From Octopus bimaculoides (Eukaryota): 64,000 nt of DNA. The DNA is taken from the NCBI RefSeq assembly GCF_001194135.2, contig NC_068991.1:8690930-8754929 (forward strand), written 5' to 3'. This document shows, one piece after another, positions 975 through 61,656 of the stretch; within the stretch, counting starts at the first letter, position 1, and each line of letters begins with the position of its first letter. The notes under the pieces were generated by a model. It worked only from the letters and a program-made list of their open reading frames with translations, was not told the origin of the DNA and searched no databases. A program made the translations under genes and the position numbers.

Positions 975-989
975 GACATTTTTTGACAG
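975..989 (+). other. Candidate 3' splice acceptor just upstream of the ZNF ORF
   Basis: ACATTTTTTGACAG|GACAAATTCAAAATG. There is an in-frame TGA at 984-986 and CAG at 987-989, then GAC AAA TTC AAA ATG in frame with the ORF. Confidence 0.5.
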
Positions 990-1001
990 GACAAATTCAA
1001 A

Positions 1002-4000
1002 ATGTCGGCTGTTAATCGGGAGAAGGGCAGAGAGAATTCTTTGAGGGTGAAGGTGAAACGTTTCAAGTGCAATTTCTGTGACAAGGCTTTCTCAACTGCT
1101 AGCAACATGCGAGAACATCAGAGGACCCACACTGGAGAAAGGCCTTACAAATGTGAGTTTTGTGGAAAGACATTTGCACAATCAAGCACACACTCCAAAC
1201 ATGTCCAGATCCACAGAAAAAAGGCATTACTGAAAAAATCGAAGAGTCCATCACAGCTCGACACTGATCTATCGACTGATGAGTTGCAGCTGGGTAGAAT
1301 TTCAATTCCTTCCACATCATTTGACACAGCAGCTCATTTATCTGCTGATGAACATTCTTCAGACCAGTATACAACTGTGATTGGGGATGTAGATTCTGAT
1401 GTTGATGTAATCCATGACCATAGAGCGACTCCTGTCTGTGATAGTGTTGAGAGTGCTGCTATTGTACCTAATGTTGTTAACAATGACCAAATTCAACCAT
1501 TTCTGTCCTATTCCCAATTACCAGAAGTATCAGATAAAGATTATGTAAAACCAGTTATTACAGGAATTTTTAAGAATTTAGCTTGTGAAGTGATGCCCAA
1601 GACTCCTCCTCTCATTGAATCCAGCGTGTGGAATGCAAATGAGCAGATAAGGAATGGAGACATAATATACAGCAATTCTGAATTGAGTATATATCCCCAG
1701 GGCTCAGAAACCAAATTGAAGTCATTTGGCAAATTTTCTGAGGGAAATTTGGCAAATGACTTAGCTGAAAATCTAGAACCTTCTAGAACATTTGAAGAGT
1801 CCCAATCAAGAGATTTTGTAACGATATCACATAACGGAAGCAATGAGGTTATCAACATTGATGATCAGGAAGATGAAGATGACAGCCAAGATAGTTTACC
1901 ATCAAAATCTTTTGATGTCTGGACAAACTCTGCTGGCTCAGTTGCAGGTTATTCTTTGGAAAAATCCTACAAATGTACATTTTGTAATGAAAATTTTGTT
2001 TCTGCTGAAGAAATGGAGGAACACATACAGTGTCACTTGACGGAGAAAGTGTTTAAATGCTGTATTTGTTATCGTGAATTCAACAAGTCTTTCTCACTTT
2101 TACAACACATACAAAGCCATAACACAGAAGAAAAGTTAAGTTCCGTTAGGCCGAGCAAATTGATGCTAAGTCCATCTGGTCAATACGAAGTGATTGACAT
2201 TCAGGAAGGCAGCCGTCAGAAGATTTTGGAATCAGATAGTCCATATGGTGCCTCTGCAAAAAGGACAGTGAAGTCTGTTAATGCCAGAATGCAGTACCTT
2301 GAAAGAGACTACAGATCAAACAATCAGCAACATAATTTAAATGATCCTGTTTCCAGCAGCAGTCTAGACAATTCCAACAGTTCATCATTTGTGGCCCTCA
2401 CATTTGGGGACGCTGAACATTCTTCACATATTGATCTAACTCAAAATAGTGATGAGCCTGTCAGACAGTTGGAAGACGCTTATGACAGTGATGACGACGA
2501 CATTAACCAAGATGTCATTTTGATAGAGCCTGATTTTCCAAAGAAAGAGACAAAGATCGTGTCAAAAGACAGGACTTTGATGCAGGAGGAACCGTCAGAC
2601 AGTTCTTCTGAGAAACTGAATTATTTTGATAGTTACTTTGCTCTGGGAGTACATGAATCAGGAGGTAGTAGCAATAAATCCTTGAAAGTGGAAGAAAGTG
2701 GCAGCACCGACTACTTGCATTCACCGTTTCCTGACCAGTTGATCAAGAATTATAGTGGTTGCTCAAAAGGAGGTATTGTGACAAGTCAACGGAAACATAG
2801 GCAACAGTTTGCCAGTAGGAGAAACCCATTAAAAGTTGCATGCATGTTGTGTCCACGGAGGTTTTCGACTGCTAGTAACATGCGTGAACATATGAGAACA
2901 CATACTGGTGAAAGACCTTTTGTTTGTAAAATCTGCCACAAAAGTTTTGCTCAGTCCAGCACACATTCTAAACACGTTCTCACTCATACAAAGAGTAAGA
3001 TGTTCTGCTGTAATTTATGTGATAAAACCTTCACAAGAGCTAATAACTACAAAAAGCATTTACAGAAACATAGTGCAAAAGAGATTGCTGAACAGCTAGA
3101 GTCTAGCCCAGTGGGTTCCTCTAGTGATGGAACATCTAAAGGGATGGGTATTTGCTCTGAGTTTTTAAGAAATCTGCTAAAGAAAAAGAATGAAATTGAT
3201 CGAAGTAACACGTCCCCTTTGTCTAATTCTAGTGACTTGTCCCATATTGCAGCAAACAGTTTAGAGAAGGAAGCCAAAGTTCAGTTGAAAAAGAAGGATT
3301 TGCAACCAAGATTTTCAACTGGAAGGGAAGACCAAATGTACCAAAGTTATTCTTTCTCAAATAAAGGAGGGAGAAAAACCATCTTTAACAAATGTCGTAA
3401 GCGAAAACTATCACCAGGGGTTAATCATCCAGCGACTGTGCAAGACCAGCAGCAGGAACTGATTGTAGGGGAGAACTTAACTGATGTTGTTGATCACAGC
3501 ATTCATAAAAGTAAGTTGACATCCCTGAAAAGCACAGTTGAAGAACTGCTGAAGACCAACCGTAACAGCTCTAGAGAGACTCAAGTGCTGTTGCCATCCA
3601 ACCCGAGTAAAAAATATTCACAACGTAAAAGAGTGTCGAAATACATTCAGAAACTAAAGAACTACCACCCCCATCGCTGTCTCTACTGTCCTCGAACATT
3701 CTCCACTTCTGGTAACATGAAGGAACACATGCGAACACATACAGGCGAGAAACCTTATGAGTGTGAAATCTGCCACCGAAAATTTGCTCAGTCAAGCACT
3801 CATTCTAAGCATGTTCTAACTCACTCTCACAAAGAACAGCTTACTTGTACATTTTGTTCAAAATCTTTCACCCACCCTGGGCCTCTAAAATATCACATGT
3901 TTCAATGTTATAAAATAAATTATATGAAGAAAACAAAAAGCAGACATCTATCTTCATTAATAGGTGGATCATCATCTTCTAAAAAACAGTCAGCAGATAA

Positions 4001-4871
4001 GGAAACCAACTCTGTAGTTGGTTCAAATTCAAGTTCTTCGGATGGTGAACAGCCAGTGAAATTTGATACTTTTCATAAAAATGATGATGACAGCACCGAG
4101 CAATTACTTCCAAGAAATGCCGAAAACGATCCTGACACTCCTTCTGCAACTTTTGTGGACAGTGAAAATATTTCTAAAATATCTAAGAATATAGATTTAC
4201 AAACATCAAATGTTTCAAAGGATCTTATTAAAAAACTCCCAGAAACGTTTAGATTGTTAACTAAGCAATGCAATGATTCTTGGAGTGGTTCAGAAAGAAA
4301 TTCTCTTGCTGATCAAGACGAGAATTATTCAAAGAAAGACCTGTGCATCTCAGATGTAAAAACTGTAATCCAAACCTCTTCAGATAAAGCAGAAGAGTTG
4401 TCCAATTCTTCAGAATTGGTATCTATTTTGAACAACAACTTGCTTGAAAAAGTTAAGGATGCTGATCTTGACAAAGAAGATTCTTCAGTGAAACAACAGG
4501 ATTCAACGAGTTCTGCTGACAGCAAAATAACTTTTACAAGTCAAGAATCCCTTACATCATGGGCAGAAAACGAAGCCAGTCTGTTCTCTGGAATGAGTGA
4601 AAAATTAAATTATCTAAATTCTTCCAAAGAGAATCAAATAGAATTAAACAAATCTGGTTTATTAGTTGACAGCATTGTAGATTCAAACAAAGACTTGCAG
4701 CCAGTTTCTGTCATGGAGCTAAATTCTCAGGAAAATTTACCGATTAGCATTGAGAATATAAAGAAAGAAATTTGTGAAGAGGACAATAGTGTTGATACAT
4801 TTTGTAACGATAAAACAACACACACAACAACAAGAGCAAACAGGGCAACTGTGCAGTGTGAGGATGATGAA

Positions 4872-4906
<35 letters not shown>

Positions 4907-7900
4907 CGATGATGATGGTGATGATGATGGTGATGATGATGATGATGATATGAAGCATATGTATCAAGTGAAAGTTGAAATTCCTATCGAGTTAAGTAGT
5001 TTCCAGCTGTCTATGACAGCTTCTGAGAACCTTTCAACAGTCAGTGACCAGAATTGTGAAGCTGTAGATGACATAATGGCCCTTAATAGAAACAATCAAT
5101 TGATTAGTTATAAGACTGCTCCCTTCAGCTGCTCATCTAAGAAAACAACCAAGAAGAACTTCCCTAACATAGATAAACAAGTCAGGGGTCTTAAAAGCAG
5201 TTTCCACCCTTTCAAGTGTGACTACTGCCCACGCACATTTTCCACCAGCAGCAATATGAAAGAACACACAAGAATTCACACAGGAGAGAAGCCATTCAAA
5301 TGCGAATATTGTTATCGTACGTTTGCCCAGTCTAGCACACGGGCGAAGCACTTATATACACACATACGGGATCAGAAGTTTGTCTGCACCTATTGTTGTA
5401 AAACATTCACTGATGCTGCTGACCTAAAGGTTCACGTAATGACACACAGCAATGTCAGTGATTCTACGGGACTTCTCTCTACCAATTTTTCAGTCAAGAC
5501 TACTGGCAGCATGTCTACAGACGAGGTAGATTGTCTTTCGGTTGATCGTTCGTTACAAGATATAACGGACACAGACATTCAGAATGATGATGGTTACAAA
5601 GAAGCACAGTATAATAAAGATCTTGAAATTTCAAATGTTGTTGATGCTACTGAAACAGAGCCTGGTCATGTTGATTGGTACCGTAAGAGTCTGGAGATTA
5701 AAGATTTAGATGATTTGAGCAAACTTCAGTCAAAGAAAAATTTGGATAGTTTTCCCATTGAACTTTGCACTAAAATCAAATTAGAAAATGTTGGAGAAGA
5801 TGAACCTGTCGAGGACCAAATGCATGAAGAGGAAGCCTCAGTTGGTATTAATTCTGAGGTAAATTTGACCTTTGAATCCAATAAGGACTTACTTAAAGTT
5901 TCTGCCAAATCACTGAAGAATTTTGGAAATTCAAGAAGTGGCAATGATAAAAAATACTCTTCTCGTTTTGAAAAATCAGGACTATCATCTGAATTCCCAG
6001 TCGATGTAGAATCAGGGTCTTATTCAAAATTAAACCAAAGTGTAGAAAATTTGCCAAAAGTTGACAACTACGAAGGCTTTAGGTGTGTCTTTTGTAGTCG
6101 GACATTTTCATCAGCAAGTAACATGAGGGAACATGTCCGTACTCACACAGGCGAGAAACCATTTGAATGTAAATTTTGTCATCGCAGATTTGCACAGTCC
6201 AGCACCCACTCAAGACACTTAAGAACCCACCTTCATATGAAAAAACACCAATGCTCTGAGTGTGGAAAATATTTCCTACAATTACATAACCTCAAAAAAC
6301 ACATTCAAGTTCACCATAAAAAGAGTTCAACAGCTTTTAATACAATGCTTCCCATATTATCCAATAGATTGGTAAGCAACACAGTAGACAAGACTATACA
6401 ATGTCAGGATGGTTTTAATTCAACAAACAAGGAGCTGAAAGTCACCACTGAAATTTTGTTGCCTTCTTGTGATTTGACATCTGACTTTAGTAGCATTGAC
6501 CATCAGGCAGAACCGGGCTCTGTTGTATTGAATACTACTATTGAAACCCCTAGTGGCTCCACTAAACCATTTAAGTGTACCTTCTGTTATGAAACATTTT
6601 CAAATGCTGTTGATTTTAATGAGCACACATACCTACATACGACCGATGCTTCATTTCAGGATTCTTTGCATTCTCAACAAATATTTCAATGTTCAGAATG
6701 TGACAGAACTTTCCATAATAGCAAAGAACTTGAAAACCATTCTAAACGGCACACTTCCTTTTCTTCATCCATTTTAATATGCAACTCTTGCAATCAAGAA
6801 TTTCCAAACTCTCTTCTATTCCAACAGCATAAAATTCTTTGTTTAGCTCAGTCTGCTACTTTGAAAATGCTTCAGTTTAGTCCCCAGAAATCTGAAGATC
6901 CTTCAATGGATGAGTCTCCCACCTTCAGCCCATATTCTAATCAGCAAGTTGAGGAAAGGTCTTCATTGAATACATATCTGAACTATGCGTTGCCACACAA
7001 AACCGTTAATACAAACCCTGAGACTGATGACTCAGCAGAATTTTTCTCACTACTCAAAGAAGCTGAGTCGGATAAAGCAAGAGAAGATGTAGAAATCATA
7101 TCAATAGCCAATCCCAGTTCACGTTTCAGTATACAAAAGATAAAATTCACCAAAGACAATTCTTATTTGGAATCATCAACTACTGATGTGGCATATCCGA
7201 AAAAACCATCCTTTCCTGATCACCTGAAACTTTATCACCAGCCAGTACAGTCAAATGACATGTTCAATAAAGGAACTGGATTGTCAAATAAAAATCGGTT
7301 AAAGACCCCCAGAAGTAAATATACTCATAAATGTCAGTTTTGTGCCAAACTCTTCAGCACGGCAAACAATCTTCGAGAGCACGTGCGAACTCACACCGGT
7401 GAGAGACCGTTCAGTTGTCGAATTTGTCATCAAAGGTTTGCTCAATCCAGCACACGTTCAAAACATGAAAAAAGTGCTCATCGTGAAACCAAATTGTCGA
7501 AATTTCATCCAAACAGGTCTGTAATCAACTCAGGTAACTCTGTAGCCCACCTGTCGAGAAGCTTGCAACTTAATGATCGCCTGAGACTGCGACGAAATTG
7601 CCACAAATGTGACTTTTGTTTCAAAGAATTTTCATCTTACAAGTCTTTGTGTTTCCACAAACAAATTCACGTGAAGAAATTTGCAGTGAGACGAACAACT
7701 GTGGATTTTAAAGACAAATTAAATGTTTTTAAGACTGCCATTGTTGATACAGATTTGAACCAGAAGCCCATAATGCCAAAGATAAATGACCCAAACATTC
7801 TTGAAAGAAAACGTTCCTGTGCCAAATTACCAAATGAAATTCCACAAGTAGAAGAGTGTTTAGATAGAATATGTGATAAAAGTCAGAAGTTATATTCACC

Positions 7901-10900
7901 GGGAAACACAATTTCTGAAAACCAAGAAACAGGGTTACCCTCTTCAATTGTTAATTTACTGAAATCGAAAGAAAGTTCTTCAGGAAACAACTATAATGAT
8001 GGTAGTAACCTTAGAATATCTGATATAAAATCTAAAAGAAATCTGTATTTGAAAACTCGAAGACTACATCCACGTACTCATAAGTGTAACTACTGTAACA
8101 AATTGTTTAGCACTCGAAACAACCTACAAGAGCATGTACGTACACACACAGGTGAAAGGCCTTTTAAATGTCTGGTTTGCCATCGTAGGTTTGCCCAGTC
8201 GAGTACTTGTTCCAAACACATGAAAACCACCCATCGATTTCACTCGAAACTTGCTTATGAACGGTGCAATAAGACCAGATTATTTGAACCACATACGGAT
8301 TTCTCTGCTACTAACCAATCTACAAAGCTTCCCATGACTGCCAATGATAATACAAAGCCACTGCTAAAGAAGAACCTTTACAAATGTGAATATTGTTCCA
8401 GAAATTTCTTTTCTTATCAATTTCTCTGTCTTCATAGACTGACTCACACCAAGAAACCATTCCAGAAACAAATATTTCAAAAAATGTCACCTGATAATAT
8501 TGTTTTATCATCTAAAAAATCTGATGAATTTTATGAAGAACACAATGTAAATTATAGAGGAGAACCCCCAGACAAATTAGTTGGTAATGGATTAATGTCT
8601 AGTAGTATAGATCCTTTATATCCTGATCCTGACAATAATCACTTTAGCTACAGTTTGCATAAAGGATATGATATAATCCAAAATGAAAAAATTGATAATC
8701 CATCAGAATTATCAAGGTATATGTCTTCTAACTCTGAATCAGATTTTAATCAAGCTCAAACCAAAGACTTAATTATTAATTCTCATCAGAACCAATTTGA
8801 AAACAGCAGGAATAACTCTGGTGAGGAGAACTTACAGAAAATACAAGGTCTAAATTCACGCTTAAAAGAAAAGAAAGACAAAGTTTTACCGAAGATTTAT
8901 TCCGAAAGTGATTCTGTAAGAAACCAGGAAATCGATAACGATGAGGGGAACAGTGATAGCATTTGTTGTGATAGTGACTTGAAGTCTGAAGAGAAATTGG
9001 ATGAGGTAGAAGAATTACCATTGAGTCGGCAGCACAAAAATGGTAAGAGAGAGGATGAAAATTTTAGCAGGAATGCAACAAGTAGTAACTTGAAGGTGTC
9101 GAAGGTTCAGCAGTGTGTTTATTGTCATAAAACTTTCAAGAATGTGAGTAATTTAAAGGAGCATCACCGAATTCATACAGGGGAACGGCCTTTTCAGTGT
9201 TATTTTTGTGCCAAAGTATTTACCCATTCCAGTACGTGTTCGAGACACATGAAACTAATGCATTTTCGAAAAAACGCATATGAGAGCTCAGTACCCAGTA
9301 GTGAAATTTCTGTTCCAATACGTAACAATAACTACGTACGAAGCAAAATGAATCCTAGAACCAAAATTCTAAGACCAACTCATCATTGTTTAACCAAATC
9401 CATAAATCTCATGAGAGACGCTGAAAACTGTGTTTGTCCTAATTGCAACAGAGTATATTCTGATGTAGCTTCATTTGCTTTACATAAATTGTCGTGCAAT
9501 ATTACTTTCAGTGGAAAAAACTTGTCCAAACCTTATTCTCAGAACTTAACTGATTCACTCAACCAAATATATTTAGACATGGATCCATCTCGTAATCCTG
9601 GTTGCTTGCCTGAAAAGTCTTCCAGAAATACCCATCACTCAAGTCATCGTGTTGTTTCTGACTCAAATAAATCTAATGAAAGGTGTGGGAGTACATTTAA
9701 TGCAAACCCTGAAGACAGTGAAGGGGCAGGAGACCCATCAAGTCCAAGGGGTCACTTTGATCATTTAGAAGACTTCTCTGATGAAATTCAGAAACAGTCA
9801 CTGCAATTTAAAACTGAGTGTATAAAAAAGGAATATCTTGAAGAATTGGTTAGTTTCCAATTGACTGAAGAAGACTGGGATATAGATCAGCTGGATTCAT
9901 CTTCTACAGAAGTTATAAAGAATACAGAGAGAGTTAAAAAGGACATGTTCTCTGAAGCAAATCATCTGAAGAAGAGGACCTCTCCAGACAATGTTGAACA
10001 ACAAACACTTAGCATTATGGAGGCTAGCACCACTGATGATTGCAAAGTGAAAACTAAAGTGGAGGCATCAGATTCAGGTCAATACGAATATTTGGATGCC
10101 AGTTCGAATTCAGTGGGCGATTCTGAAGAATGCTTGCAAGTTGATTCAAGGCAGCCATCAGGACTTAGCTTTGATGATGTTATTGTTTTATCAGAAGATG
10201 AATGTTCTGACAAAAGTGAAGACGGAGAGGATCTGCCTTCAACTGATAGCGTTCTGTTGAACTCTGAAAATGCTGGTAAAGTTGTCAAAATGTCTAAGGG
10301 TCATCTAAAGAGAAATTTCATGAAGCCTGAGTCCCCTGAAAGCGATGAGTATGGTTTGAACTTAGGATTAGATGCTCTGGAAAGTGAATCAGTTGGATCT
10401 GATGAGGTAAGGATAATTCCTACAAAGGTGAACGAAACCTTATTCAGTAAACGTTTGCAGTCTCGAAAACGGTTTCCTGCTTCAAACCAGTCTGATGAAA
10501 CAATGAATAAAAAACCTTTAAAATCCACCAAGATCCAGGCATCTTGTGAATCTTTCAGAGTTTCTTCTTCCCTGCAATCCAAACAACATATTTGTCCTTT
10601 CTGTCAGAAGTCTTACTCAAGTGCCAGTAATATGAAGGAACATATGAGAACTCACACAGGAGAAAGACCTTTTTCTTGCCAAATTTGTCTTAAGACATTT
10701 GCTCAGAAAAGCACTTTGTCAAAGCATATGAAAACTCATAAGAAGGGTTCTCTTTCCACAGCTTTACAACATAATCCTGAGTATTTAGATTTCAGTTGTT
10801 CTCAGAACAAGGAATCACTGAAAACCATTACATCTGATGAGGTTGATGGCAATGTAGATATATCTAATGAAGAAGAATTATCTCCAAAGTCGCATTTATC

Positions 10901-11411
10901 CTCTAGTTTATTTACAACACAATATTTCAGAACAGTTTCTTTAGACATTAGTGATACCTCTAGTATTAAAGATAGTAACACTGTTAGGCAGTTGCAGTCC
11001 CATGGTTTAGAAAATGCATCACAATCTGTAGATCGTCTGCAGTCCAATGATAATCTAACTGTGACTGAGGGTGGTGTGACTTCTGTAATCACCAGCGGGA
11101 ACCAACCTAGTACAATAGCTAACTCTTCTAATTTTGCACGCAACAAACATTCTCCCAGTCCCACCAAACAAACACATTCATCTACCAAGAATTCGACGAA
11201 AGCCGACTGTTTTACCAAGCCATTTCAGTGTGATATCTGCTGTAAAACATTCACTACATCAGGAAATCTGAAAGAGCACAGACGAATTCATACAGGAGAA
11301 AGACCATTTGAGTGTCCATTTTGTAGCAGAACTTTTGTGCAAGCAAGCACACGATCACGACACGTTAAAAACCATTTAAAACATTCAGACATTTCTCTGA
11401 TTAATGCATGA
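1002..11411 (+). CDS. Giant multi-cluster C2H2 zinc-finger protein (3469 aa, about 32 fingers, one coding exon)
   Basis: Stop-free 10.4-kb ORF. Ten doublets CxxC..FS(T/S)xxN(M/L)xEHxRxHTGE(R/K)P(F/Y)xCxxC..FAQSSTxS(K/R)H start at 1068, 2841, 3678, 5217, 6084, 7332, 8085, 9114, 10593 and 11229. About 12 additional single fingers, 3 of them C2HC. Canonical TGE(K/R)P linkers within doublets. Confidence 0.95.
4860..4949 (+). repeat. Coding (GAT)n microsatellite encoding a roughly 30-residue poly-Asp tract
   Basis: GAGGATGATGAAGATGATGAT...GATGATGAT translates as EDDEDDDDDDDDDDDDDDDGDDDGDDDDDD. Confidence 0.95.
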
Positions 11412-11709: not shown

Positions 11710-11730
11710 AATAAACAAAGAATTAATAAA
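11710..11730 (+). terminator. Candidate polyadenylation signals of the ZNF gene
   Basis: AATAAA at 11710-11715 and 11725-11730, about 300 nt after the stop codon. Confidence 0.45.
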
Positions 11731-22757: not shown

Positions 22758-23820
22758 CTGAAGAACAAATAAATAATAAAAAAAAAAATTTAATTTAATA
22801 CTGAATCATTAAATCAGATTTTAAAGGAAAAGGAAATGGCTATTATTGTTACAGGTAGGCAGTTTTAAAATATTTCTTGATCAACATCTCTGTTCTTTAT
22901 AGCCCCGTGCTAGGTATATGAGGGTGAAGGGTAAAGACCCCCTTTGGTCATGAATGACCATGGAAAAGCACCTTGAAAGTTCCCCTCTGAGGCACAAGTC
23001 CAGGCAAGGTTGTTTCTGGAAAGCCAGCAGTCACCCATGCAGTCCCATCTTCACACCACTGATGTTATCCAAGGGAAAGGCAAAGGCTGATACAGCTTGG
23101 CACCAGTGATGTTGCTACTCATTTCTACAGCTGAGTGAACTGGAGTAATGTACACACAGCCCGGCCCGAGAATCGAACTCACTACCTCATGATTGTGAGC
23201 CTAATGCTCTAACCACTGATCCATATACCTTGGGTATACACCAGATACACAAGATAGTCATAAAAGTGATGTAATAATTTTATACAATTATTGATTACGA
23301 CTACAGGTCATTGTCGACTTATCTTTTATCTTTTACTTGTTTCAGTTATTAGACTGTGGTCATGCTGGGGCACCACCTTGAAGAATCTTAGTTGAACAAA
23401 TTGACCTCAATACTCATTTTTATTTTGTAAAGCCTGGTTCTTATTCTATCAGTCTCTTTTGCCTAACTGTTAAGTTATAGTGATGCAAACACACCAACAC
23501 AAGTTGTCAAGTGGTTATAGGGGACAAACACATACCCAAAGACACACACGCACACTTGCATATACAATGGGCTTTTTTCAGTTTTTGTCTGTGAAATCTA
23601 CTCACAAGGCTTTTGTTAGCCCAAAGCTACAGTAACAGACACCTGCCCAAGGTGCCATGCACTGAACCTGGAACCATGTTGTTTGCAAGAATACTTGGCA
23701 CACATCCACGCTTGCACCTATAGTAAATCATATGGTACTTTTTGCTCAAATATTAAAATGGCAAAATATTTAGGAAAACAAACCAAAAAAAAATGTTGTT
23801 TGAGAATGTTATTAACTTAC

Positions 23821-24507
23821 CTGGGCTTTTCATGGCAGAGATTTCACAGTAAGTTTTATCAGATTCAGAAAGACTTCTCATGTGAGATTTGCTCACAACA
23901 GAATAAACATGATCATCGTTGTTTTTAGAATTATCTGCTGCCTTACCATGACCGGACATCGTCAAAGACTTTGCCTTGGAGGATGGCATTTCAGAATTCA
24001 TCAGGGCAGCTGCTCCTTTTACACACGGTACTAATTCTTGGTAGGGTGACCGAGAATTATTGCCGTTAAACTGAAGGTGGTCATATCTAGGTGAAACTGG
24101 TGGTGCTTTAGTTGGGATCACATGTCTGTCAAGGTTAGAAATTGTGTCTTGTGAAGATAAATTTTGAGCCTCTTCTTGATTGCCAGCTGATATGCATGTC
24201 ATAAATTTCTTGGTATCTTCGGAAGTATTATTTACATTAGAATATATCCCGCTTGAAGTGACCTTCCATTCTTGCTCAATTGGAGTAACTGGTCTGCAAG
24301 TCAGGGAATTTGAATAAAGTGCAGGACTGGGAGTTCTTTGGGTTGGTGAGAGATTTTGTGGGGACATTTCAACAGGAGATAAACTATTCGAGGTACATTG
24401 TTCAGGGGTTACAGTTAGGTTTTCTGGCTTCTTTTTCCTCTCAGGTGGCAGGGGTGTTTCTTGGCGGGGTTTGCTTTCATAAACAGGAAATGTTGAAATG
24501 GAATTTT
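23821..24507 (-). CDS. PTPN12: PTP-PEST-family phosphatase, 687-nt exon (Pro/Ser/Thr-rich PEST-like region)
   Basis: Lies inside ORF 23753-24517. Acceptor TTTTCTTTGTATTTAG|AAAAT and donor CCCAG|GTAAGT. Encodes NSISTFPVYESKPRQETPLPPERKK...VYSVVSK...AMKSP. Confidence 0.8.
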
Positions 24508-25024
24508 CTAAATACAAAGAAAATAAATTGCATGAGTGAAAACAATGGAAGACTCATAACAATTATATTTCCCTGCAAACAAGTCAAACTTTTCAGACCA
24601 AAACTTACAGCCAAAAAGGATCAGTCAACTTATATACCCAAATAATTCTAAAGGTCCAAAAATTCATTATATACTATGTTGACTTCTGTGTCGAAAAATA
24701 CAGTATATATTATATTCTAAGATAATGTTAAGGGTTAATAGTAAGAACTTCTGTAATGTTACCTATGACTGAGGGCTATTAATATAAATCAACAACAGTT
24801 GTAATTGAGAGACTATCATTGTTATTAAATTGCAGGTTTTAGTAGCATGATTTAATTAATTACCAATGCAGTGAGCATTGAAGAGTAGAAGCTGAACTTC
24901 CTGGCTATCTAAGCTAATGAGATGGTCACGATCTTTGGTTGAAGCCAGTTTCACTCTGAATGTATACTGAACATTGAAATAAGAACAAGGTGTTGTCAGA
25001 AACAGAGATAAGTGAAACAACTGT

Positions 25025-33709: not shown

Positions 33710-34022
33710 ACATACACGTATATATACATATATATATATATATACATACATGTGTATATACACATATATACATGTATATATATACATGTATATATACACA
33801 TATATACATGTATATATACACATATATACATGTATATATACACATATACACATGTATATATACACATATACATATATATATATACACATATACATATATA
33901 TATATACACATATACATATATATATACATGTATATATACACATATACGTATATATACATACATACATACATACATATATACATACATGTATATGTATATA
34001 CATATATATATATATATACATC
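33710..34022. repeat. Compound (TA)/(CA) higher-order microsatellite
   Basis: Repeated TATATACACATATATACATG-type units. Confidence 0.95.
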
Positions 34023-34458
34023 TAATATAAGATCTGAATCCAGCTCTGAGAAATTTCTTTTTATTACCAAGCCTATTTCACATAGTATTATCACAAACAA
34101 TATTTTACTAACTGCTTTTTTCCCACCTGGCATGGGTTGAACAACTCTGCAATATAGTACATCTCCCATTATTTTCACATCAAGCTATTTCCATTTCTGA
34201 AGACTTTCCAATATTCTTGGATTTGACCTGACTACTTCTCAAGTAAAAGTTATGAGAGGTAGTGGCATTATTATTTTCAAAATTAATTTAAATGCATTAT
34301 CTAACGAATTCATTAGAAATATGAGAACAAAAGCGTAAAACTGTAAATATCAGATTAAACATTATAGAATCACAAACTGTCATACTCACCCCCATATATT
34401 CCAATAAAATATTTCCTAAAATTGAGGATTACAAAAGAGATTAAGAAGGGGTACTTAC

Positions 34459-39739: not shown

Positions 39740-39808
<69 letters not shown>

Positions 39809-39826
39809 AGAGAGAGAGAGAGAGAG

Positions 39827-39865
<39 letters not shown>

Positions 39866-39870
39866 TAAAG

Positions 39871-39906
<36 letters not shown>
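39740..39906. repeat. Compound (GA)n-(GT)n microsatellite; similar long (GA)n tracts at 25026-25162 and 61300-61432
   Basis: Direct inspection. Confidence 0.95.
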
Positions 39907-55923: not shown

Positions 55924-56989
55924 ATTTTCGATAAATTCCTCTATTTTACATAATATCAATGTCCATTTTCCATGCTGGCATGGGTTGAATGGTTTGACTG
56001 GGGACTGGTGAGCCAGATGGCTGCACCAGGCTCCAATCTGATTTGGAGGAAGGGGACATTCTTAGCTCTACCTTGGATCAACTCCTCACAGCAAAGTATG
56101 GCTTCTAATTTCCAAGGAAAGAAGGGCAAGTTTTGTTATATCTTGGATAACTTTTGCCATGAAATAATTTTATATTGTCTGCTACAGAAATACAAAAGAC
56201 AATCATGTCTTATTTGGAGTAACTTCTACAAAACAATACTTACCTCTATCTCATTGATGAATGGTATTAAAGTGTTGTCACATAGTTAGGGGTGAGGGTT
56301 AGAGAGAAAATGGTCCTCTCCAGGGGACACTTTTATGGTGGAGTGGCACTTTTGTGTCTGCTTTTACAGTAGAAGCACTTTTGAGGTGAGGAAGATGTGG
56401 AAAACTCAAGGGCTGCCTCATGTGGCACCTAATCTAGCTATATCACAGGTAAAGTAAAATCTTTACAGGTCAAAATCAATCCAAACCTGAAAGCAATTCA
56501 CACAACTTTTACCCCTCCCCTCATCTCTGTAATTCTACTCACAAAATCTGCGCCAACATTCTTGGCATTTCTCTTTTTCTTTTTTCTTTATATAATTAAA
56601 GAAAATTCTATTTGTAATTAAAGCAAATTAAACAAACTGGTAAAGGGTGGTGCCAGTAGTGTGGTGGTGGTGGTGGTGGTGGTGGTGGTAGCAGTAATGT
56701 CAATGGTGGTTTAGTGATAGAGGCTGTATTACTAGTAGTGGCAGTGCTGCTAGAGAGGCTTGTGAAGATGGCATGTTGGGATTGGTACTGATGCAGGTAA
56801 AGTAGGGTTACTGTTGTAGTAGTAGTAGTAGTAGTAGTATTGTTGTTGTTGTTGGTGGTGGTGATGGTGGTGGTGGTGGTAGTGATGGCAGCAGCAATAG
56901 AAGGAGTGGTGGTGATGGCAGTCATGGTAGTATAGGTGGTTGTGGCGATGGTAGTGATGGTGGTAGTAGTGGTAGTGGAGATGGTCGTA

Positions 56990-57350
56990 GTGGTAGCAGT
57001 GATGGTACTAGTGGTAGCGGAGATGGTACTAGTGGTAGCGGAGATGGTACTAGTGGTAGCAGTGATGGTACTAGTGGTAGCGGTGTTGGTACTAGTGGTA
57101 GCGGTGTTGGTACTAGTGGTAGCAGTGATGGTACTAGTGGTAGCAGTGATGGTACTAGTGGTAGCGGAGATGGTACTAGTGGTAGCGGAGATGGTACTAG
57201 TGGTAGCGGAGATGGTACTAGTGGTAGCGGAGATGGTACTAGTGGTAGCGGTGTTGGTACTAGTGGTAGCGGTGATGGTACTAGTGGTAGTGGAGATGGT
57301 ACTAGCGGTATCAGAGATGGTACTAGTAGTAGCGGTGATGGTACTAGCAG
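56990..57350. repeat. 21-bp minisatellite, about 17 units
   Basis: Unit GATGGTACTAGTGGTAGC(G/A)G(A/T), preceded by a (GGT/GTA)n triplet region from about 56660. Confidence 0.95.
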
Positions 57351-59701
57351 TAGCGTTTTCCATGCTAGCATGGGTTGGACAGTTTGACAGGAGCTAGTCA
57401 GCTGGACGACTGCTCAGGCTCCATGTCTGTCTTGGAATAGTTTCTATGGCTGGGTGCTCTTCCTAACACCAACCACTCAACAGAATGTACTGGGTGCTTT
57501 TATGCAGCACCCGCACAGGTACTTTTACATGGCGCCAGCACGAGCGCATTTTATGTGGCATCAGCATCCTTGAGTAAAAGAGCTAAAATAAAAAAAATAA
57601 AAAACCCTAAAAAGACCCATAAAGGATCCCTTCCAAAGTTGTTGCTATTACTCTTAGGTGTAGAGATGTTGACAGTAAAGTGTGTTGGGTGAAAGTGAAT
57701 GTTGCTATCTGTAATGATTAAGCTGCTGTTATGGAGACATACAACAAAAAAAGCTTCCAACCATGACAATCCAATCTGAACAGATCTATGATCAAAGAGT
57801 CTAAGATTAAATTACCTAAATTTCTTTTTATTTTTTCGTTTGTTTTAAGATAAGATATCACTCAATGGAGATTTGGTTGCTATTTCTAGCAGGTTGAGGT
57901 TCTTTAGCAGTAAGTGCAAATGGCAGTAATGGTTGAAGATGGTAGTGATGTTTGGGTGCTGATGCTAATGTTCTATGATGATGTTGGCATTGATGATGGT
58001 GATGTTGGCGTTGATGACGGTGATGTTGGCGCTGATGACGGCGACGTTGGCGCTGATGATGATGTTGCTATTGATGATGATGCTAGTGCTGATATTGATG
58101 GCAGTGGTGCCGATTGCCGATGTCTGTGGCGGTGCTGATGCAGTTGACGCTTTTGGTGGTGGTGCAACTGGTACAATTGTCTACTAACTATGATAGAAGG
58201 CAAATAAGTGTGGTAATAATAGTTGAACAATCCAGATGGTAGCTGGATGAACGATATCGATGATCATACCATTGACAAGCTTTAATAACACATTGGTAGT
58301 AGCGTTAATTATGATAATGACGATGGATTTATAGTGTTTATAATTCTTGGACTAACGTATTTAGTCAGACTAATATCTCTGCCTTCTCCTCTACTGCTTT
58401 CTCTTTCCTTTTCTTTCTTTCATCCAATCCAAAATATTGGGTTTCATTTTGTTTCGGAAAACTTTGGGTGCTCCCCCCCACACTTCGTCTTCCATTCACG
58501 ACTCCAACCGCAACACATCAAGCAACGTCTCTGCCCTGTCTATCGTTTTCATGTCTCTTCAAGTAGTTGTACAGTTTTCCGAACCATTCGACTTCACCAT
58601 CACCCTGTATACACATACACAACTTTACTCACATGCACACATTCACACACAACTGCACACACATGAACATAACTGCACTCACACACACACAAGTGCACTG
58701 GCATGCACACACAATTGCACTGGCATGCACACGTGTCCATGCACACACAAGCACGTGCGCACACGCATACACATAAATAATGTGAGTCATCTCTTACTCC
58801 ACCCTGGTGTAAAGATGAGCAGAAGGGGAGGGAGAGAGAAAAAGAGGAAGGAGAGAAAAGGGGAGAGAGAGGAATGGTGGGAGAAGAGAGGGGGAGGGAG
58901 AGGGAGAGAGGGAGAGGGAGAGGGAGAGAGAGAGATAAAAATCAGCCAGACATGGAACACCCATGTTTTAAACCACTACCCCACCACCACAACCACACAT
59001 CTACCCTCCCNNNNNNNNNNNNNNNNNNNNNNNNNNNNNNNNNNNNNNNNNNNNNNNNNNNNNNNNNNNNNNNNNNNNNNNNNNNNNNNNNNNNNNNNNN
59101 NNNAAATGAAAAACTCAACCGCCTGCAGCATGCAACGGACTCTTCTCCAGTTCAGTAAACAACAAGGACAGATTCCACAGGATTTTGGCAATTCCGTTCA
59201 GCAATTCCAGTTACAGCAGTAACAGGCTGGCAGTGGGTAGGAAGAGATTATTAGCAGAGATTGCAGAGATTAAGCAAAAAAAAAAACACACACACACACA
59301 CACACACATACATATACATAAAGTGAAGGCCACAACTTGAAGGATAAGCTTCTTTCTCCCCCCCCCCTCTCTCTCTCTCACACACACACCTAAAAGATAC
59401 ACAGAAGGACAGATGAAGAAATATTCAAAAGGAAATATAAAACCATTTTCCTAGTTGAAAGCACTAATGAAATTTGATGCTAATTGCACTCTTTTAGATT
59501 TACCCATGTTCCCTAATTCCATCCTCAACATACTTGCAGTACAAGTCGTTCTGGCACAGCCATTTTGGTGCTTACGATTAGGTGCTGCTGAGTCAACGCT
59601 GACTTATTTGACATCAGACCTTTTAATATTTCTCTCATTCTCTCCTGCTCTCTTTCTGTTTATGTAAATATTCAGTTATGACTGTAACATCTCTCTCTCT
59701 T

Positions 59702-61296: not shown

Positions 61297-61417
<121 letters not shown>

Positions 61418-61656
61418 TAGAGAAAGAGAGAGATACATAAATCTATCGCCCCCATTTCTCTTCCTCTATAAACATGCACCTTCACTCCCATACACACACA
61501 CACACAGACTCCTCTACCTACTCAGGCACACTAACACACAACATTCCTCCAAACCTATGTACACAACCGACTCACCCACTTTCCTATTAATTCACCCCCG
61601 ACTAACATACACGTAAATCCACCTACCCTACATATATTCAAGCTTCCATTCTTCTT

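What the first reader, a model, noticed from the sequence alone, without database searches (positions are those of the whole stretch)
1002..11411. 3469-aa protein carrying ten copies of one conserved zinc-finger doublet on long spacers
Sequence: the same two recognition helices recur ten times. Finger A is T/S-A-S-N-M-R/K-E-H and finger B is Q-S-S-T-x-S-K/R-H, at residues 23, 614, 893, 1406, 1695, 2111, 2362, 2705, 3198 and 3410. The spacers (doublet starts 212-591 aa apart) show no obvious similarity to each other. Established: octopus has a large C2H2 expansion, mostly tandem arrays, and Spalt/Schnurri-type factors carry only a few dispersed doublets. Inference: selection has kept ten binding heads of identical specificity on flexible tethers. 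This is the design of a multivalent DNA (or RNA) bridging or looping protein rather than a long-site reader, and I do not recognise it as a named family.
Basis: partly seen in the sequence, partly recalled or inferred. Interest (0 to 1): 0.82.

Follow-up and report, generated by a model that had tools for sequence, protein, structure and literature searches.

The report
Giant octopus protein with ten finger-pairs
One uninterrupted 10.4-kb reading frame in an octopus chromosome encodes a 3,469-residue protein, probably mostly unstructured, with ten widely spaced zinc-finger pairs that share almost the same DNA-reading residues, which suggests that one molecule grips many copies of one short DNA motif.

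Summary
Window 1002-11411 (+) is one 3,469-codon ORF.

The pairs are a distinct subtype. They score 80-102 bits against a leave-one-out profile. Generic finger pairs average 51 bits (maximum 81), BCL11A scores 68, SALL4 57 and HIVEP1 37.

Base-contacting positions are 72-83% identical among the ten pairs, against 13% in control poly-zinc-finger proteins. Synonymous sites between pairs are fully randomised (same codon 0.443 observed, 0.438 expected). The copies are therefore old, and each is held by purifying selection, not by gene conversion.

The spacers (163-542 aa) are Ser/Asp/Lys/Asn-rich and show no detectable similarity to each other.

Best reading: a real gene for a multivalent binder of one short (~6 bp) DNA motif, resembling Sall or PRDII-BF1 taken to an extreme, and working like the ten-AT-hook protein D1. 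DNA binding, bridging, expression and conservation in other species are untested. The homology tools could not return proteins this long, so the lack of orthologues is not evidence of absence.

Verdict: new variant of a known kind, moderately interesting.

The parts
1002..11411 (+). Single coding exon, 3469 codons plus TGA stop. It is annotated as one gene with exactly this product in GCA_001194135.2, CM046611.1.
   Evidence: P(no stop in 3469 codons) is about 1e-103 at 38% GC. The longest other ORF in the window is 266 codons. AT skew is +0.11 to +0.15 across the ORF and near 0 in the flanks.
980..989 (+). Splice-acceptor-like tttttgacag directly before GACAAATTCAAA-ATG. An in-frame TGA lies at 984-986.
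   Evidence: Read. An exon starting at 990 would be in frame, so an upstream coding exon cannot be excluded. None was seen in 10 kb upstream, which includes a 1793-N gap.
1068..1214 (+). Finger pair D1 (aa 23-71), plain pair
   Evidence: (96.3 bits)
1974..2120 (+). Atypical finger pair (aa 325-373) with degenerate linker HLTEKVFKC. It may be a decayed copy of the pair.
   Evidence: 32 bits, which is within the generic range, so kinship is unproven
2841..3071 (+). Module 2: pair D2 (aa 614-662) plus adjacent third finger (aa 670-690)
   Evidence: (94.3 bits)
3678..3908 (+). Module 3: pair D3 (aa 893-941) plus adjacent third finger, C2HC type (aa 949-969)
   Evidence: (96.1 bits)
4860..4949 (+). 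Poly-Asp tract (aa 1287-1316) encoded by a (GAT)n microsatellite
5217..5447 (+). Module 4: pair D4 (aa 1406-1454) plus adjacent third finger (aa 1462-1482)
   Evidence: (94.8 bits)
6084..6314 (+). Module 5: pair D5 (aa 1695-1743) plus adjacent third finger (aa 1751-1771)
   Evidence: (92.9 bits)
6576..6842 (+). Three isolated atypical fingers (aa 1859-1879, 1897-1917 and 1927-1947, the last C2HC)
   Evidence: 17 bits or less against the pair profile
7332..7670 (+). Module 6: pair D6 (aa 2111-2160, HxxxxH in finger B) plus distal finger (aa 2203-2223)
   Evidence: (92.2 bits)
8085..8447 (+). Module 7: pair D7 (aa 2362-2411, HxxxxH) plus distal finger (aa 2462-2482). It is the closest relative of module 6 (75% identity).
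   Evidence: (93.2 bits)
9114..9497 (+). Module 8: pair D8 (aa 2705-2754, HxxxxH, the most divergent pair) plus distal C2HC finger (aa 2812-2832)
   Evidence: (87.9 bits)
10593..10739 (+). Finger pair D9 (aa 3198-3246), plain pair
   Evidence: (93.6 bits)
11229..11375 (+). Finger pair D10 (aa 3410-3458), plain pair, 11 residues before the C-terminus
   Evidence: (88.6 bits)
11710..11730 (+). Two AATAAA hexamers (11710-11715 and 11725-11730), about 300 nt after the stop. These are candidate polyadenylation signals.
   Evidence: Read. Function is inferred.

Best explanation
This is a genuine protein-coding gene of Octopus bimaculoides. Its 10.4-kb single coding exon encodes a giant nuclear C2H2 zinc-finger protein. 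The protein grew by old, serial internal duplication of a module consisting of a finger pair, an optional third finger and a spacer of about 200-500 residues.

The spacers have since diverged beyond recognition and are compositionally disorder-like. The ten TGE(R/K)P-linked pairs have each been held by purifying selection with nearly the same base-contacting residues.

Most likely mechanism (inferred): each pair is a weak, autonomous reader of the same motif of about 6 bp. The recognition code suggests roughly 5'-GTACAT-3', with low confidence. Because such a motif occurs by chance about every 1.6 kb, useful affinity and specificity would come only from avidity, that is, from several pairs of one molecule engaging clustered or tandemly repeated copies. 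Long tethers would also let one molecule hold motif copies on separate DNA segments, which would compact or bridge them. The 12 other fingers may add context.

Shown here: the gene is real, the architecture is as described, selection acts on the pairs, and the pair has a canonical DNA-type fold. Inferred: DNA binding, shared specificity, avidity and bridging.
For: Reality of the gene:
- The ORF has 3469 codons, while the next longest ORF in the window has 266. P(no stop) is about 1e-103.
- The public assembly annotates a gene with exactly this product.
- There are no Ns in the ORF. The repeat units are only 55-78% identical at DNA level, so misassembly by repeat collapse is implausible.

Selection:
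- At 1253 identical-residue comparisons the same codon is used in 44.3%, against 43.8% expected from codon usage.
- pS is saturated while pN is about 0.24.
- Recognition positions are 0.72-0.83 identical, against 0.13 in 82 control ZNFs and 0.08 in the protein's other fingers.

Distinct subtype:
- Leave-one-out scores are 80-102 bits. Generic pairs average 50.6 and reach 80.8 at most (n = 789).
- The best single PDB domain scores about 46 bits.

DNA-type pair:
- The HTGE[RK]P[FY] linker is invariant.
- The AlphaFold2 model has pLDDT 92 with a beta-beta-alpha x2 fold.
- It superposes on DNA-bound BCL11A ZF4-5, SALL4 ZFC4/ZFC1, ZNF217, Zif268 and ZBTB24 at TM 0.80-0.96 and rmsd 0.6-1.7 A.
- Several of these are two-finger units that bind DNA on their own.
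- Asn at +3 pairing with adenine is a well-defined preference (PMC3668361).

Tethers:
- The 2533 spacer residues are 15% Ser, 8.8% Asp, 8.4% Lys, 7.7% Asn and 0.2% Trp.
- No order-prone segment was found on the TOP-IDP scale.
- There is no spacer-to-spacer similarity.

Precedents:
- PRDII-BF1 has two widely separated finger pairs that recognise the same sequence (Fan & Maniatis 1990, cited in PMC5892016).
- D1 has 10 AT-hooks and an acidic domain, and bundles satellite DNA through multivalent binding (PMC5957525).

Low information of a 6-mer: GTACAT occurs 39 times in 64 kb, against 40 expected.
Against: - No expression data and no orthologue could be obtained, so conservation beyond this genome is unknown (see Tried and rejected).
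- Finger B carries His, Arg or Cys at helix position 4, where canonical fingers have a hydrophobic residue. This is atypical and could mean a non-standard docking mode or a non-DNA ligand.
- Pfam also matches zf-C2H2_jaz (dsRNA type), though much more weakly.
- The twelve other fingers have unrelated helices and could dominate targeting.
- The code-derived motif is a guess and is not enriched locally.
- Disorder of the spacers rests on composition only. The AlphaFold run on aa 1-1000 failed even on the fingers (mean pLDDT 34).
- Nothing tests bridging.
Confidence: 0.5

Rival explanations
1. It is an ordinary sequence-specific transcription factor. The repeated pairs are redundant or alternative DNA-binding heads, as in Sall or Schnurri, that bind single sites one at a time. 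The long spacers carry cofactor-docking motifs, and no avidity or bridging is involved.
For: Dispersed pairs in Sall and HIVEP/Schnurri work within conventional transcription factors (PMC5892016; PMC10853822). The spacers hold acidic tracts and a few SUMO-interaction-like motifs.
Against: Ten copies kept under selection with the same contact residues is hard to explain by redundancy. A 6-bp site alone is uninformative in a genome of gigabase size. The SIM-like motifs are not significantly enriched: 3 observed against 0.95 expected, and 39 of 500 shuffles reach the observed count.
Confidence: 0.2
2. The pairs are not DNA readers. They are repeated RNA-binding or protein-binding modules, for example docking sites for one partner, and make the protein a scaffold.
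For: C2H2 fingers can mediate protein-protein contacts (PMC12774644, abstract). Finger B lacks the usual hydrophobic residue at helix position 4. There is a weak Pfam match to the dsRNA-type zf-C2H2_jaz.
Against: The invariant TGE(R/K)P linker and the C-x2-C-x12-H-x3-4-H spacing are the DNA-binding tandem type. The model superposes on DNA-bound pairs. The conserved residues are exactly the base-contacting positions -1, 2, 3 and 6. Jaz-type fingers have a different spacing and long linkers (established knowledge).
Confidence: 0.15
3. It is a highly expanded, divergent orthologue of a named dispersed-pair family (Sall, HIVEP/Schnurri, BCL11 or another) and therefore already known in kind.
For: The layout of pairs, some with a third finger after a non-canonical linker, resembles the Sall and BCL11 clusters. 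BCL11A ZF4-6 is the top structural match. One finger A reads FTTSGNLK, 7/8 identical to the Sal-box.
Against: - The Sal-box is absent from every C-terminal finger, and there is no RRKQ N-terminal motif.
- Profile scores for BCL11A (68), SALL4 (57.5) and HIVEP1 (37) fall inside the generic range (mean 51, maximum 81) and below the octopus pairs (80-102).
- The structural matches are equally good for Zif268, Aart and ZBTB24, so they are generic.
Confidence: 0.1
4. It is not a functional gene: a pseudogene, a transposon-derived ORF or an assembly chimera.
For: No expression evidence could be obtained. An assembly gap lies 1-2.8 kb upstream, next to a LINE reverse-transcriptase fragment.
Against: - A 10.4-kb open frame in 38% GC DNA cannot persist without selection.
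- The internal copies are ancient yet all intact.
- There are no Ns or near-identical repeats inside the ORF.
- No transposon domains appear in Pfam.
Confidence: 0.02

Closest known systems
Sall / Spalt proteins
   Same: They carry several TGEKP-type C2H2 pairs dispersed along a long protein. The pairs resemble each other, and one has an attached third finger. SALL4 two-finger clusters bind short AT-rich DNA on their own (PMC5892016; PDB 8a4i and 7y3i).
   Different: Sall has 3-4 pairs, not ten. Every Sall C-terminal finger has the Sal-box FTTKGNLK, and the N-terminus has a 12-residue NuRD motif. Both are absent here. SALL4 ZFC4 scores 57.5 bits on the pair profile, in the generic range.
HIVEP / Schnurri / PRDII-BF1 (MBP-1)
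   Same: This is the classic case of widely separated finger pairs in one very large protein that recognise the same DNA sequence (Fan & Maniatis 1990, cited).
   Different: It has two such pairs rather than ten. The pair sequence is unrelated: 37 bits and 29-40% identity.
BCL11A/B
   Same: It has two similar pairs, the second followed by a third finger after a non-TGEKP linker, and an acidic tract between them. It is the best structural superposition and the highest-scoring named pair (68 bits).
   Different: The score lies within the generic distribution. There is no N-terminal C2HC finger or MSRRKQ motif here. It has two pairs rather than ten.
Basonuclin / disco
   Same: It has three separated pairs of zinc fingers in one protein (PMC2200026, abstract).
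   Different: No sequence comparison was run here. From memory, basonuclin pairs lack the TGEKP linker and have a different second finger.
Multi-AT-hook proteins D1 and HMGA1 (functional analogue, not a relative)
   Same: They carry many copies (10 in D1) of one short, low-information DNA-binding head on a flexible chain with an acidic region. They bind tandem repeats multivalently and bundle DNA from different chromosomes (PMC5957525).
   Different: The head is a different fold and binds the minor groove, whereas these fingers would read the major groove. No AT-hook (GRP) motif is present here.
Coleoid-expanded tandem C2H2 genes
   Same: They are from the same superfamily and the same genome, where C2H2 genes are greatly expanded (PMC12513265).
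   Different: Those are tandem arrays whose recognition residues vary from finger to finger: control identity 0.13, against 0.72-0.83 here.

Membership tests
C2H2 zinc-finger superfamily | C-x2-4-C-x12-H-x3-5-H fingers that pass the Pfam zf-C2H2 threshold | tested here: met
   PF00096 scores 246 bits against a cut-off of 25.2, and PF13465 scores 236 bits against 40. The regex finds 32 fingers.
C2H2 zinc-finger superfamily | Canonical TGEKP-type linker and beta-beta-alpha fold in tandem fingers (DNA-binding type) | tested here: met
   HTGE[RK]P[FY] is invariant in all ten pairs. The model has pLDDT 92 and TM 0.80-0.96 to DNA-bound pairs. Actual DNA binding is not testable here.
Sall / Spalt | Sal-box FTTKGNLK in the C-terminal finger of each pair | tested here: not met
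   There is no TKGNL anywhere. The nearest string, FTTSGNLK, lies in the N-terminal finger of pair 10. The definition comes from PMC5892016.
Sall / Spalt | N-terminal 12-residue NuRD-binding motif (MSRRKQ...) and a poly-Q region | tested here: not met
   There is no RRKQ. The longest Q run is QQQ. The N-terminus reads MSAVNREKGREN.
HIVEP / Schnurri | Pair sequence of the MBP-1/PRDII-BF1 type (KKPSMLKKH ... KTKGNLTKH) | tested here: not met
   The 1BBO sequence scores 37 bits on the pair profile and is 29-40% identical.
BCL11 | Pair sequence closer to BCL11 than generic pairs are; N-terminal C2HC finger and MSRRKQ motif | tested here: not met
   BCL11A scores 68 bits, against a generic mean of 50.6 and maximum of 80.8. 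The octopus pairs score 80-102. The motif is absent.
Tandem-array (KZFP-like or coleoid-expanded) C2H2 | Contiguous finger array with variable recognition residues | tested here: not met
   The pairs are separated by 163-542 residues. Recognition identity is 0.72-0.83, against 0.13 in controls.
Multi-AT-hook proteins (D1/HMGA) | AT-hook core (R-G-R-P) | tested here: not met
   There is no GRP tripeptide in the protein. The resemblance is functional only.
Conserved cephalopod or molluscan orthogroup | Orthologue with the same pairs in another species | not testable with these tools
   The word-index search never lists proteins longer than about 1.75x the query, and the full-length query timed out. 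The exhaustive library lacks even the window's own protein.

The most novel reading that the evidence does not exclude
The protein is a cephalopod-lineage zinc-finger counterpart of the multi-AT-hook 'DNA bundlers'. It would be a single chain whose ten equal-specificity finger pairs on disordered tethers tie together many copies of one 6-bp motif, for example in satellite or tandem repeats of the repeat-rich octopus genome. It would thereby organise chromatin in three dimensions. No named C2H2 family has this architecture.
Probability: 0.2. Interest if true: 0.8.

Novelty: new variant of a known kind. Interest (0 to 1): 0.55.

Why it matters
Zinc-finger proteins normally gain specificity by stringing different fingers into one long reader. 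Here selection has done the opposite. It has kept ten copies of the same two-finger head apart on long linkers for long enough to erase all synonymous-site similarity.

If the heads do share one motif, the protein would be a natural experiment in avidity-based DNA recognition and possibly in DNA bridging. It would be a zinc-finger analogue of D1/HMGA1 and an extreme of the Sall/PRDII-BF1 design.

It would also give a concrete, testable candidate for how the repeat-rich, heavily rearranged cephalopod genome is organised. It shows too that the cephalopod C2H2 repertoire holds architectures other than tandem arrays.

Tried and rejected
1. Full-length homology search: timed out.

2. Word-index searches gave only generic ZNFs. 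The queries were spacer aa 60-612, the pair profile and a synthetic concatenate of the ten pairs without linkers. In all three the listed proteins never exceeded about 1.75x the query length (936, 91 and 874 aa). A 3.4-kaa orthologue could therefore not appear, and these negatives say nothing.

The window's own protein is absent from that collection, so this too is uninformative.

4. A degenerate DNA pattern for N-M-[RK]-E-H...HTGE[RK]P[FY] hits 6 of the ten pairs in the window. Both metagenome contigs it hit were ordinary tandem ZNFs.

5. A full-text search for the helix strings in papers found none.

6. BCL11-like origin: I considered it because of the AQSSKLTRHMKTH resemblance. I rejected it because the score lies inside the generic range.

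7. Cryptic decayed pairs in the long spacers: none. The atypical pairs at 325 and 1859 might be decayed copies, but they score no better than generic fingers.

8. SUMO-interaction-like motifs in the spacers: 3 observed against 0.95 expected, not significant. No CtBP (PxDLS) or HP1 (PxVxL) motifs were found.

9. AlphaFold2 on aa 1-1000 without an alignment: mean pLDDT 34, and even the fingers were unfolded, so it gives no information on disorder.

10. The code-derived motif GTACAT is not enriched in the window.

11. Rfam and tRNA scans of the window found nothing.


Full report
**What is there.** Window 1002-11411 (+) is a single ORF of 3469 codons. It is the only ORF of 150 aa or more in the first 14 kb (translation). 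Elsewhere in the 64-kb window the longest stop-free stretch is 266 codons. At 38% GC the chance of 3469 codons without a stop is about 1e-103. The ORF region also has a uniform A-rich sense-strand bias (AT skew +0.11 to +0.15) that the flanks lack.

An exact look-up places the ORF on CM046611.1 of assembly GCA_001194135.2 at about 8.69 Mb. A gene with exactly this 3469-aa product and exactly this span is on record there. From memory, that accession is the Octopus bimaculoides chromosome-scale assembly.

There are no Ns inside the ORF. The internal repeats are only 55-78% identical at DNA level, so collapse or chimerism is not a concern.

**Gene ends.**
- Immediately upstream lies an acceptor-like tttttgacag (980-989) that contains an in-frame TGA (984-986). 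An exon starting at 990 would be in frame.
- Ten kb of upstream sequence shows no convincing coding ORF. It does contain a 1793-N gap and a LINE reverse-transcriptase fragment, so a 5' exon cannot be excluded.
- Two AATAAA hexamers lie about 300 nt after the stop.

**The fingers.** Pfam finds only C2H2-type domains. A regex scan finds 32 fingers. Start-to-start distances are 212-591 aa, and the spacers between pairs are 163-542 aa.

All ten pairs share C-x2-C-x12-H-x3-H, then TGE(R/K)P(F/Y)-x, then C-x2-C-x12-H-x3-4-H. Seventeen columns are invariant.

In standard helix numbering:
- Finger A reads T/S(-1)-x-S/G/N(2)-N(3)-M/L(4)-x-E(6).
- Finger B reads Q(-1)-x-S(2)-T(3)-H/R/C/L(4)-S/A-K/R(6).

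- an atypical pair at 325/353;
- third fingers directly after pairs 2-5 (at 670, 949, 1462, 1751) behind non-canonical linkers;
- three singles at 1859, 1897 and 1927;
- distal fingers 40-60 aa after pairs 6-8 (at 2203, 2462, 2812).

Pairs 6-8 also share an HxxxxH ending in finger B. The modules therefore fall into three contiguous sub-types: 1, 9 and 10 are plain; 2-5 are triplets; 6-8 are a pair plus a distal finger. A distance tree groups pairs 6 and 7, pairs 1-5, and pairs 8 and 10. This is the signature of serial internal tandem duplication.

**Is the repetition more than chance, and is it selected?** A profile of the pairs scores the ten at 88-96 bits and every other finger of the protein at 32 bits or less. 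Other scores against the pair profile:

| Sequences scored | Bits |
|---|---|
| Ten octopus pairs, leave-one-out | 80-102 |
| 789 generic TGEKP-linked pairs (a set biased towards similarity) | mean 50.6, maximum 80.8 |
| Best single domain in the PDB | about 46 |

Identity at the four base-contacting positions is 0.72 (A) and 0.83 (B). Within 82 control poly-ZNF proteins the mean is 0.13 (maximum 0.40), and among this protein's other fingers it is 0.08.

At the DNA level the copies have no residual ancestry. Nei-Gojobori pS is saturated while pN is about 0.24. At 1253 comparisons of identical residues the same codon is used 44.3% of the time, against 43.8% expected from the gene's codon usage.

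So the duplications are old and gene conversion is not homogenising the copies. Each pair has been kept independently by purifying selection on the protein sequence, including the specificity residues. That is the opposite of what tandem arrays show.

**The spacers.** With fingers masked, self-BLAST finds nothing better than E = 0.03. A permissive profile scan finds no decayed pairs hidden in the long spacers.

The 2533 spacer residues are 15% Ser, 8.8% Asp, 8.4% Lys and 7.7% Asn, with 0.2% Trp and net negative charge. No order-prone segment appears on the TOP-IDP scale. A (GAT)n microsatellite encodes a 30-residue acidic tract.

This composition is disorder-like, but it is the only evidence. 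AlphaFold2 on aa 1-1000 without an alignment gave pLDDT 34 and did not even fold the fingers, so it says nothing.

Short-motif scans:
- SIM-like motifs: not significantly enriched.
- CtBP and HP1 motifs: none.
- One basic cluster at 797-805.

**Structure of the head.** AlphaFold2 on pair 1, with the ten paralogues as alignment, gives pLDDT 92 and two beta-beta-alpha units. Foldseek superposes the model on DNA-bound tandem fingers at TM 0.80-0.96 and rmsd 0.6-1.7 A. The matches are BCL11A ZF4-5 and ZF2-3, SALL4 ZFC4 and ZFC1, ZNF217, Zif268, Aart and ZBTB24.

The matches are generic to DNA-wrapping C2H2 pairs. Several of the targets are autonomous two-finger DNA-binding units, so a pair alone can in principle read DNA.

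The unusual feature is helix position 4 of finger B (His, Arg or Cys instead of a hydrophobic residue). From memory, GLI and ZIC fingers of the SDRAKH type share this.

**Mechanism (inference).** From the classical recognition code, Asn+3 reads A, Gln-1 reads A and Lys/Arg+6 reads G, with Thr and Glu giving weak T and C. The Asn+3-adenine rule is cited in PMC3668361. The rest is textbook knowledge (Wolfe et al. 2000) recalled from memory.

On that basis the pair would read roughly 5'-GTA-CAT-3'. This is low confidence. Any 6-mer is uninformative: GTACAT occurs 39 times in this 64-kb window, as expected by chance.

Ten such heads kept under selection make most sense if affinity and specificity come from avidity for clustered or tandemly repeated motif copies. 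Spacers of 163-542 disordered residues would let neighbouring heads reach sites roughly 10-20 nm apart on average and far more when extended. That estimate is rough polymer scaling of my own. It would include sites on other DNA segments, so bridging or compaction is plausible but untested.

Precedents for parts of this logic:
- PRDII-BF1/HIVEP1 has two widely separated pairs that bind the same sequence (Fan & Maniatis 1990, cited).
- Sall proteins have 3-4 similar pairs, some binding AT-rich heterochromatin (PMC5892016).
- Drosophila D1 has ten AT-hooks and an acidic domain, and bundles satellite DNA through multivalent binding (PMC5957525).

**Comparison and membership.** The protein is a C2H2 zinc-finger protein (criteria met). 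It is not a Sall: no Sal-box in any C-terminal finger, no RRKQ N-terminal motif and no poly-Q. The only near Sal-box string (FTTSGNLK) sits in the wrong finger of pair 10.

I recalled the sequences below from memory and then verified them against PDB entries 8cuc/7y3i, 1bbo and 8tho. All three score inside the generic range.

| Known pair | Bits on the pair profile |
|---|---|
| SALL4 ZFC4 | 57.5 |
| HIVEP1/MBP-1 | 37 |
| BCL11A ZF4-5 | 68 |

The protein is also unlike the tandem arrays that dominate the cephalopod C2H2 expansion (PMC12513265). It has no AT-hooks. I therefore file it as a new variant of a known kind (dispersed-pair C2H2 proteins), extreme in copy number and in the uniformity of its heads.

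**What could not be settled.** Whether orthologues exist and whether the gene is expressed.

- The word-index homology tool never returned proteins longer than about 1.75x the query and timed out on the full protein.
- The exhaustive library returned nothing for a 443-aa spacer, but it does not contain the window's own protein either.
- A DNA-pattern scan of metagenomes found only unrelated ZNFs.
- A literature string search found nothing.

These negatives are limits of the tools, not evidence that the gene is an orphan.

**Verdict.** Interest is moderate (0.55). The architecture is unusual and gives a directly testable model, but function, expression and phylogenetic depth remain open.

Noticed in passing
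window 16976 to at least 21411 (-); L002 25975-30410: The downstream neighbour is a multi-exon protein-tyrosine-phosphatase gene (Pfam Y_phosphatase, 657-aa product on record) on the opposite strand. It could serve as a synteny anchor for orthologue searches. The Ser/Pro-rich 254-aa ORF at 23753-24517 (-) may be one of its exons.
   Followed up: no
L002 7200-9000 (just upstream of window position 1) and L002 7206-9197 (-): A 1793-N assembly gap ends immediately before the window. It is flanked by a LINE-type reverse-transcriptase fragment (KAIKSMKTGKAPGPSGITAEMLK...) on the minus strand. The promoter or a 5' exon of the zinc-finger gene could be hidden there.
   Followed up: partly
window 4859-4953: A (GAT)32 microsatellite inside the coding exon encodes a poly-Asp tract of about 30 residues. 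Its length is likely to be polymorphic.
   Followed up: no
window residues aa 1333 and 2951 (nt about 4998 and 9852): A short motif E-L-x-S-F-Q-L-[ST] occurs in two otherwise unrelated spacers (IELSSFQLSMT and EELVSFQLTEED). It may be a linear motif or chance.
   Followed up: no
window aa 283-297, 503-510 and 3058-3077 (nt about 1848, 2508 and 10173): Hydrophobic cores flanked by acidic or Ser runs (EVINIDDQEDEDD, DVILIEPD, DVIVLSEDECSD) resemble SUMO-interaction motifs. The scan's rule flagged three (aa 134, 283, 3060), not significant against shuffles (3 vs 0.95 expected; 39/500).
   Followed up: yes
window 56949-57355: A 21-nt minisatellite, 19 copies at 91% identity (unit TGGTAGCGGTGATGGTACTAG), creates long spurious ORFs on both strands.
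   Followed up: no
window 33712-34029, 39741-39874, 61301-61433; N-runs near 46.5 kb and 59.0 kb: The intergenic and intronic sequence is rich in (TATACA)-like and (AG)n microsatellites. It holds two further assembly gaps.
   Followed up: no
The search for homologous proteins behaviour: The proteins listed never exceeded about 1.75x the query length. Short queries therefore cannot retrieve very long homologues, which matters for any giant protein examined with this tool.
   Followed up: partly
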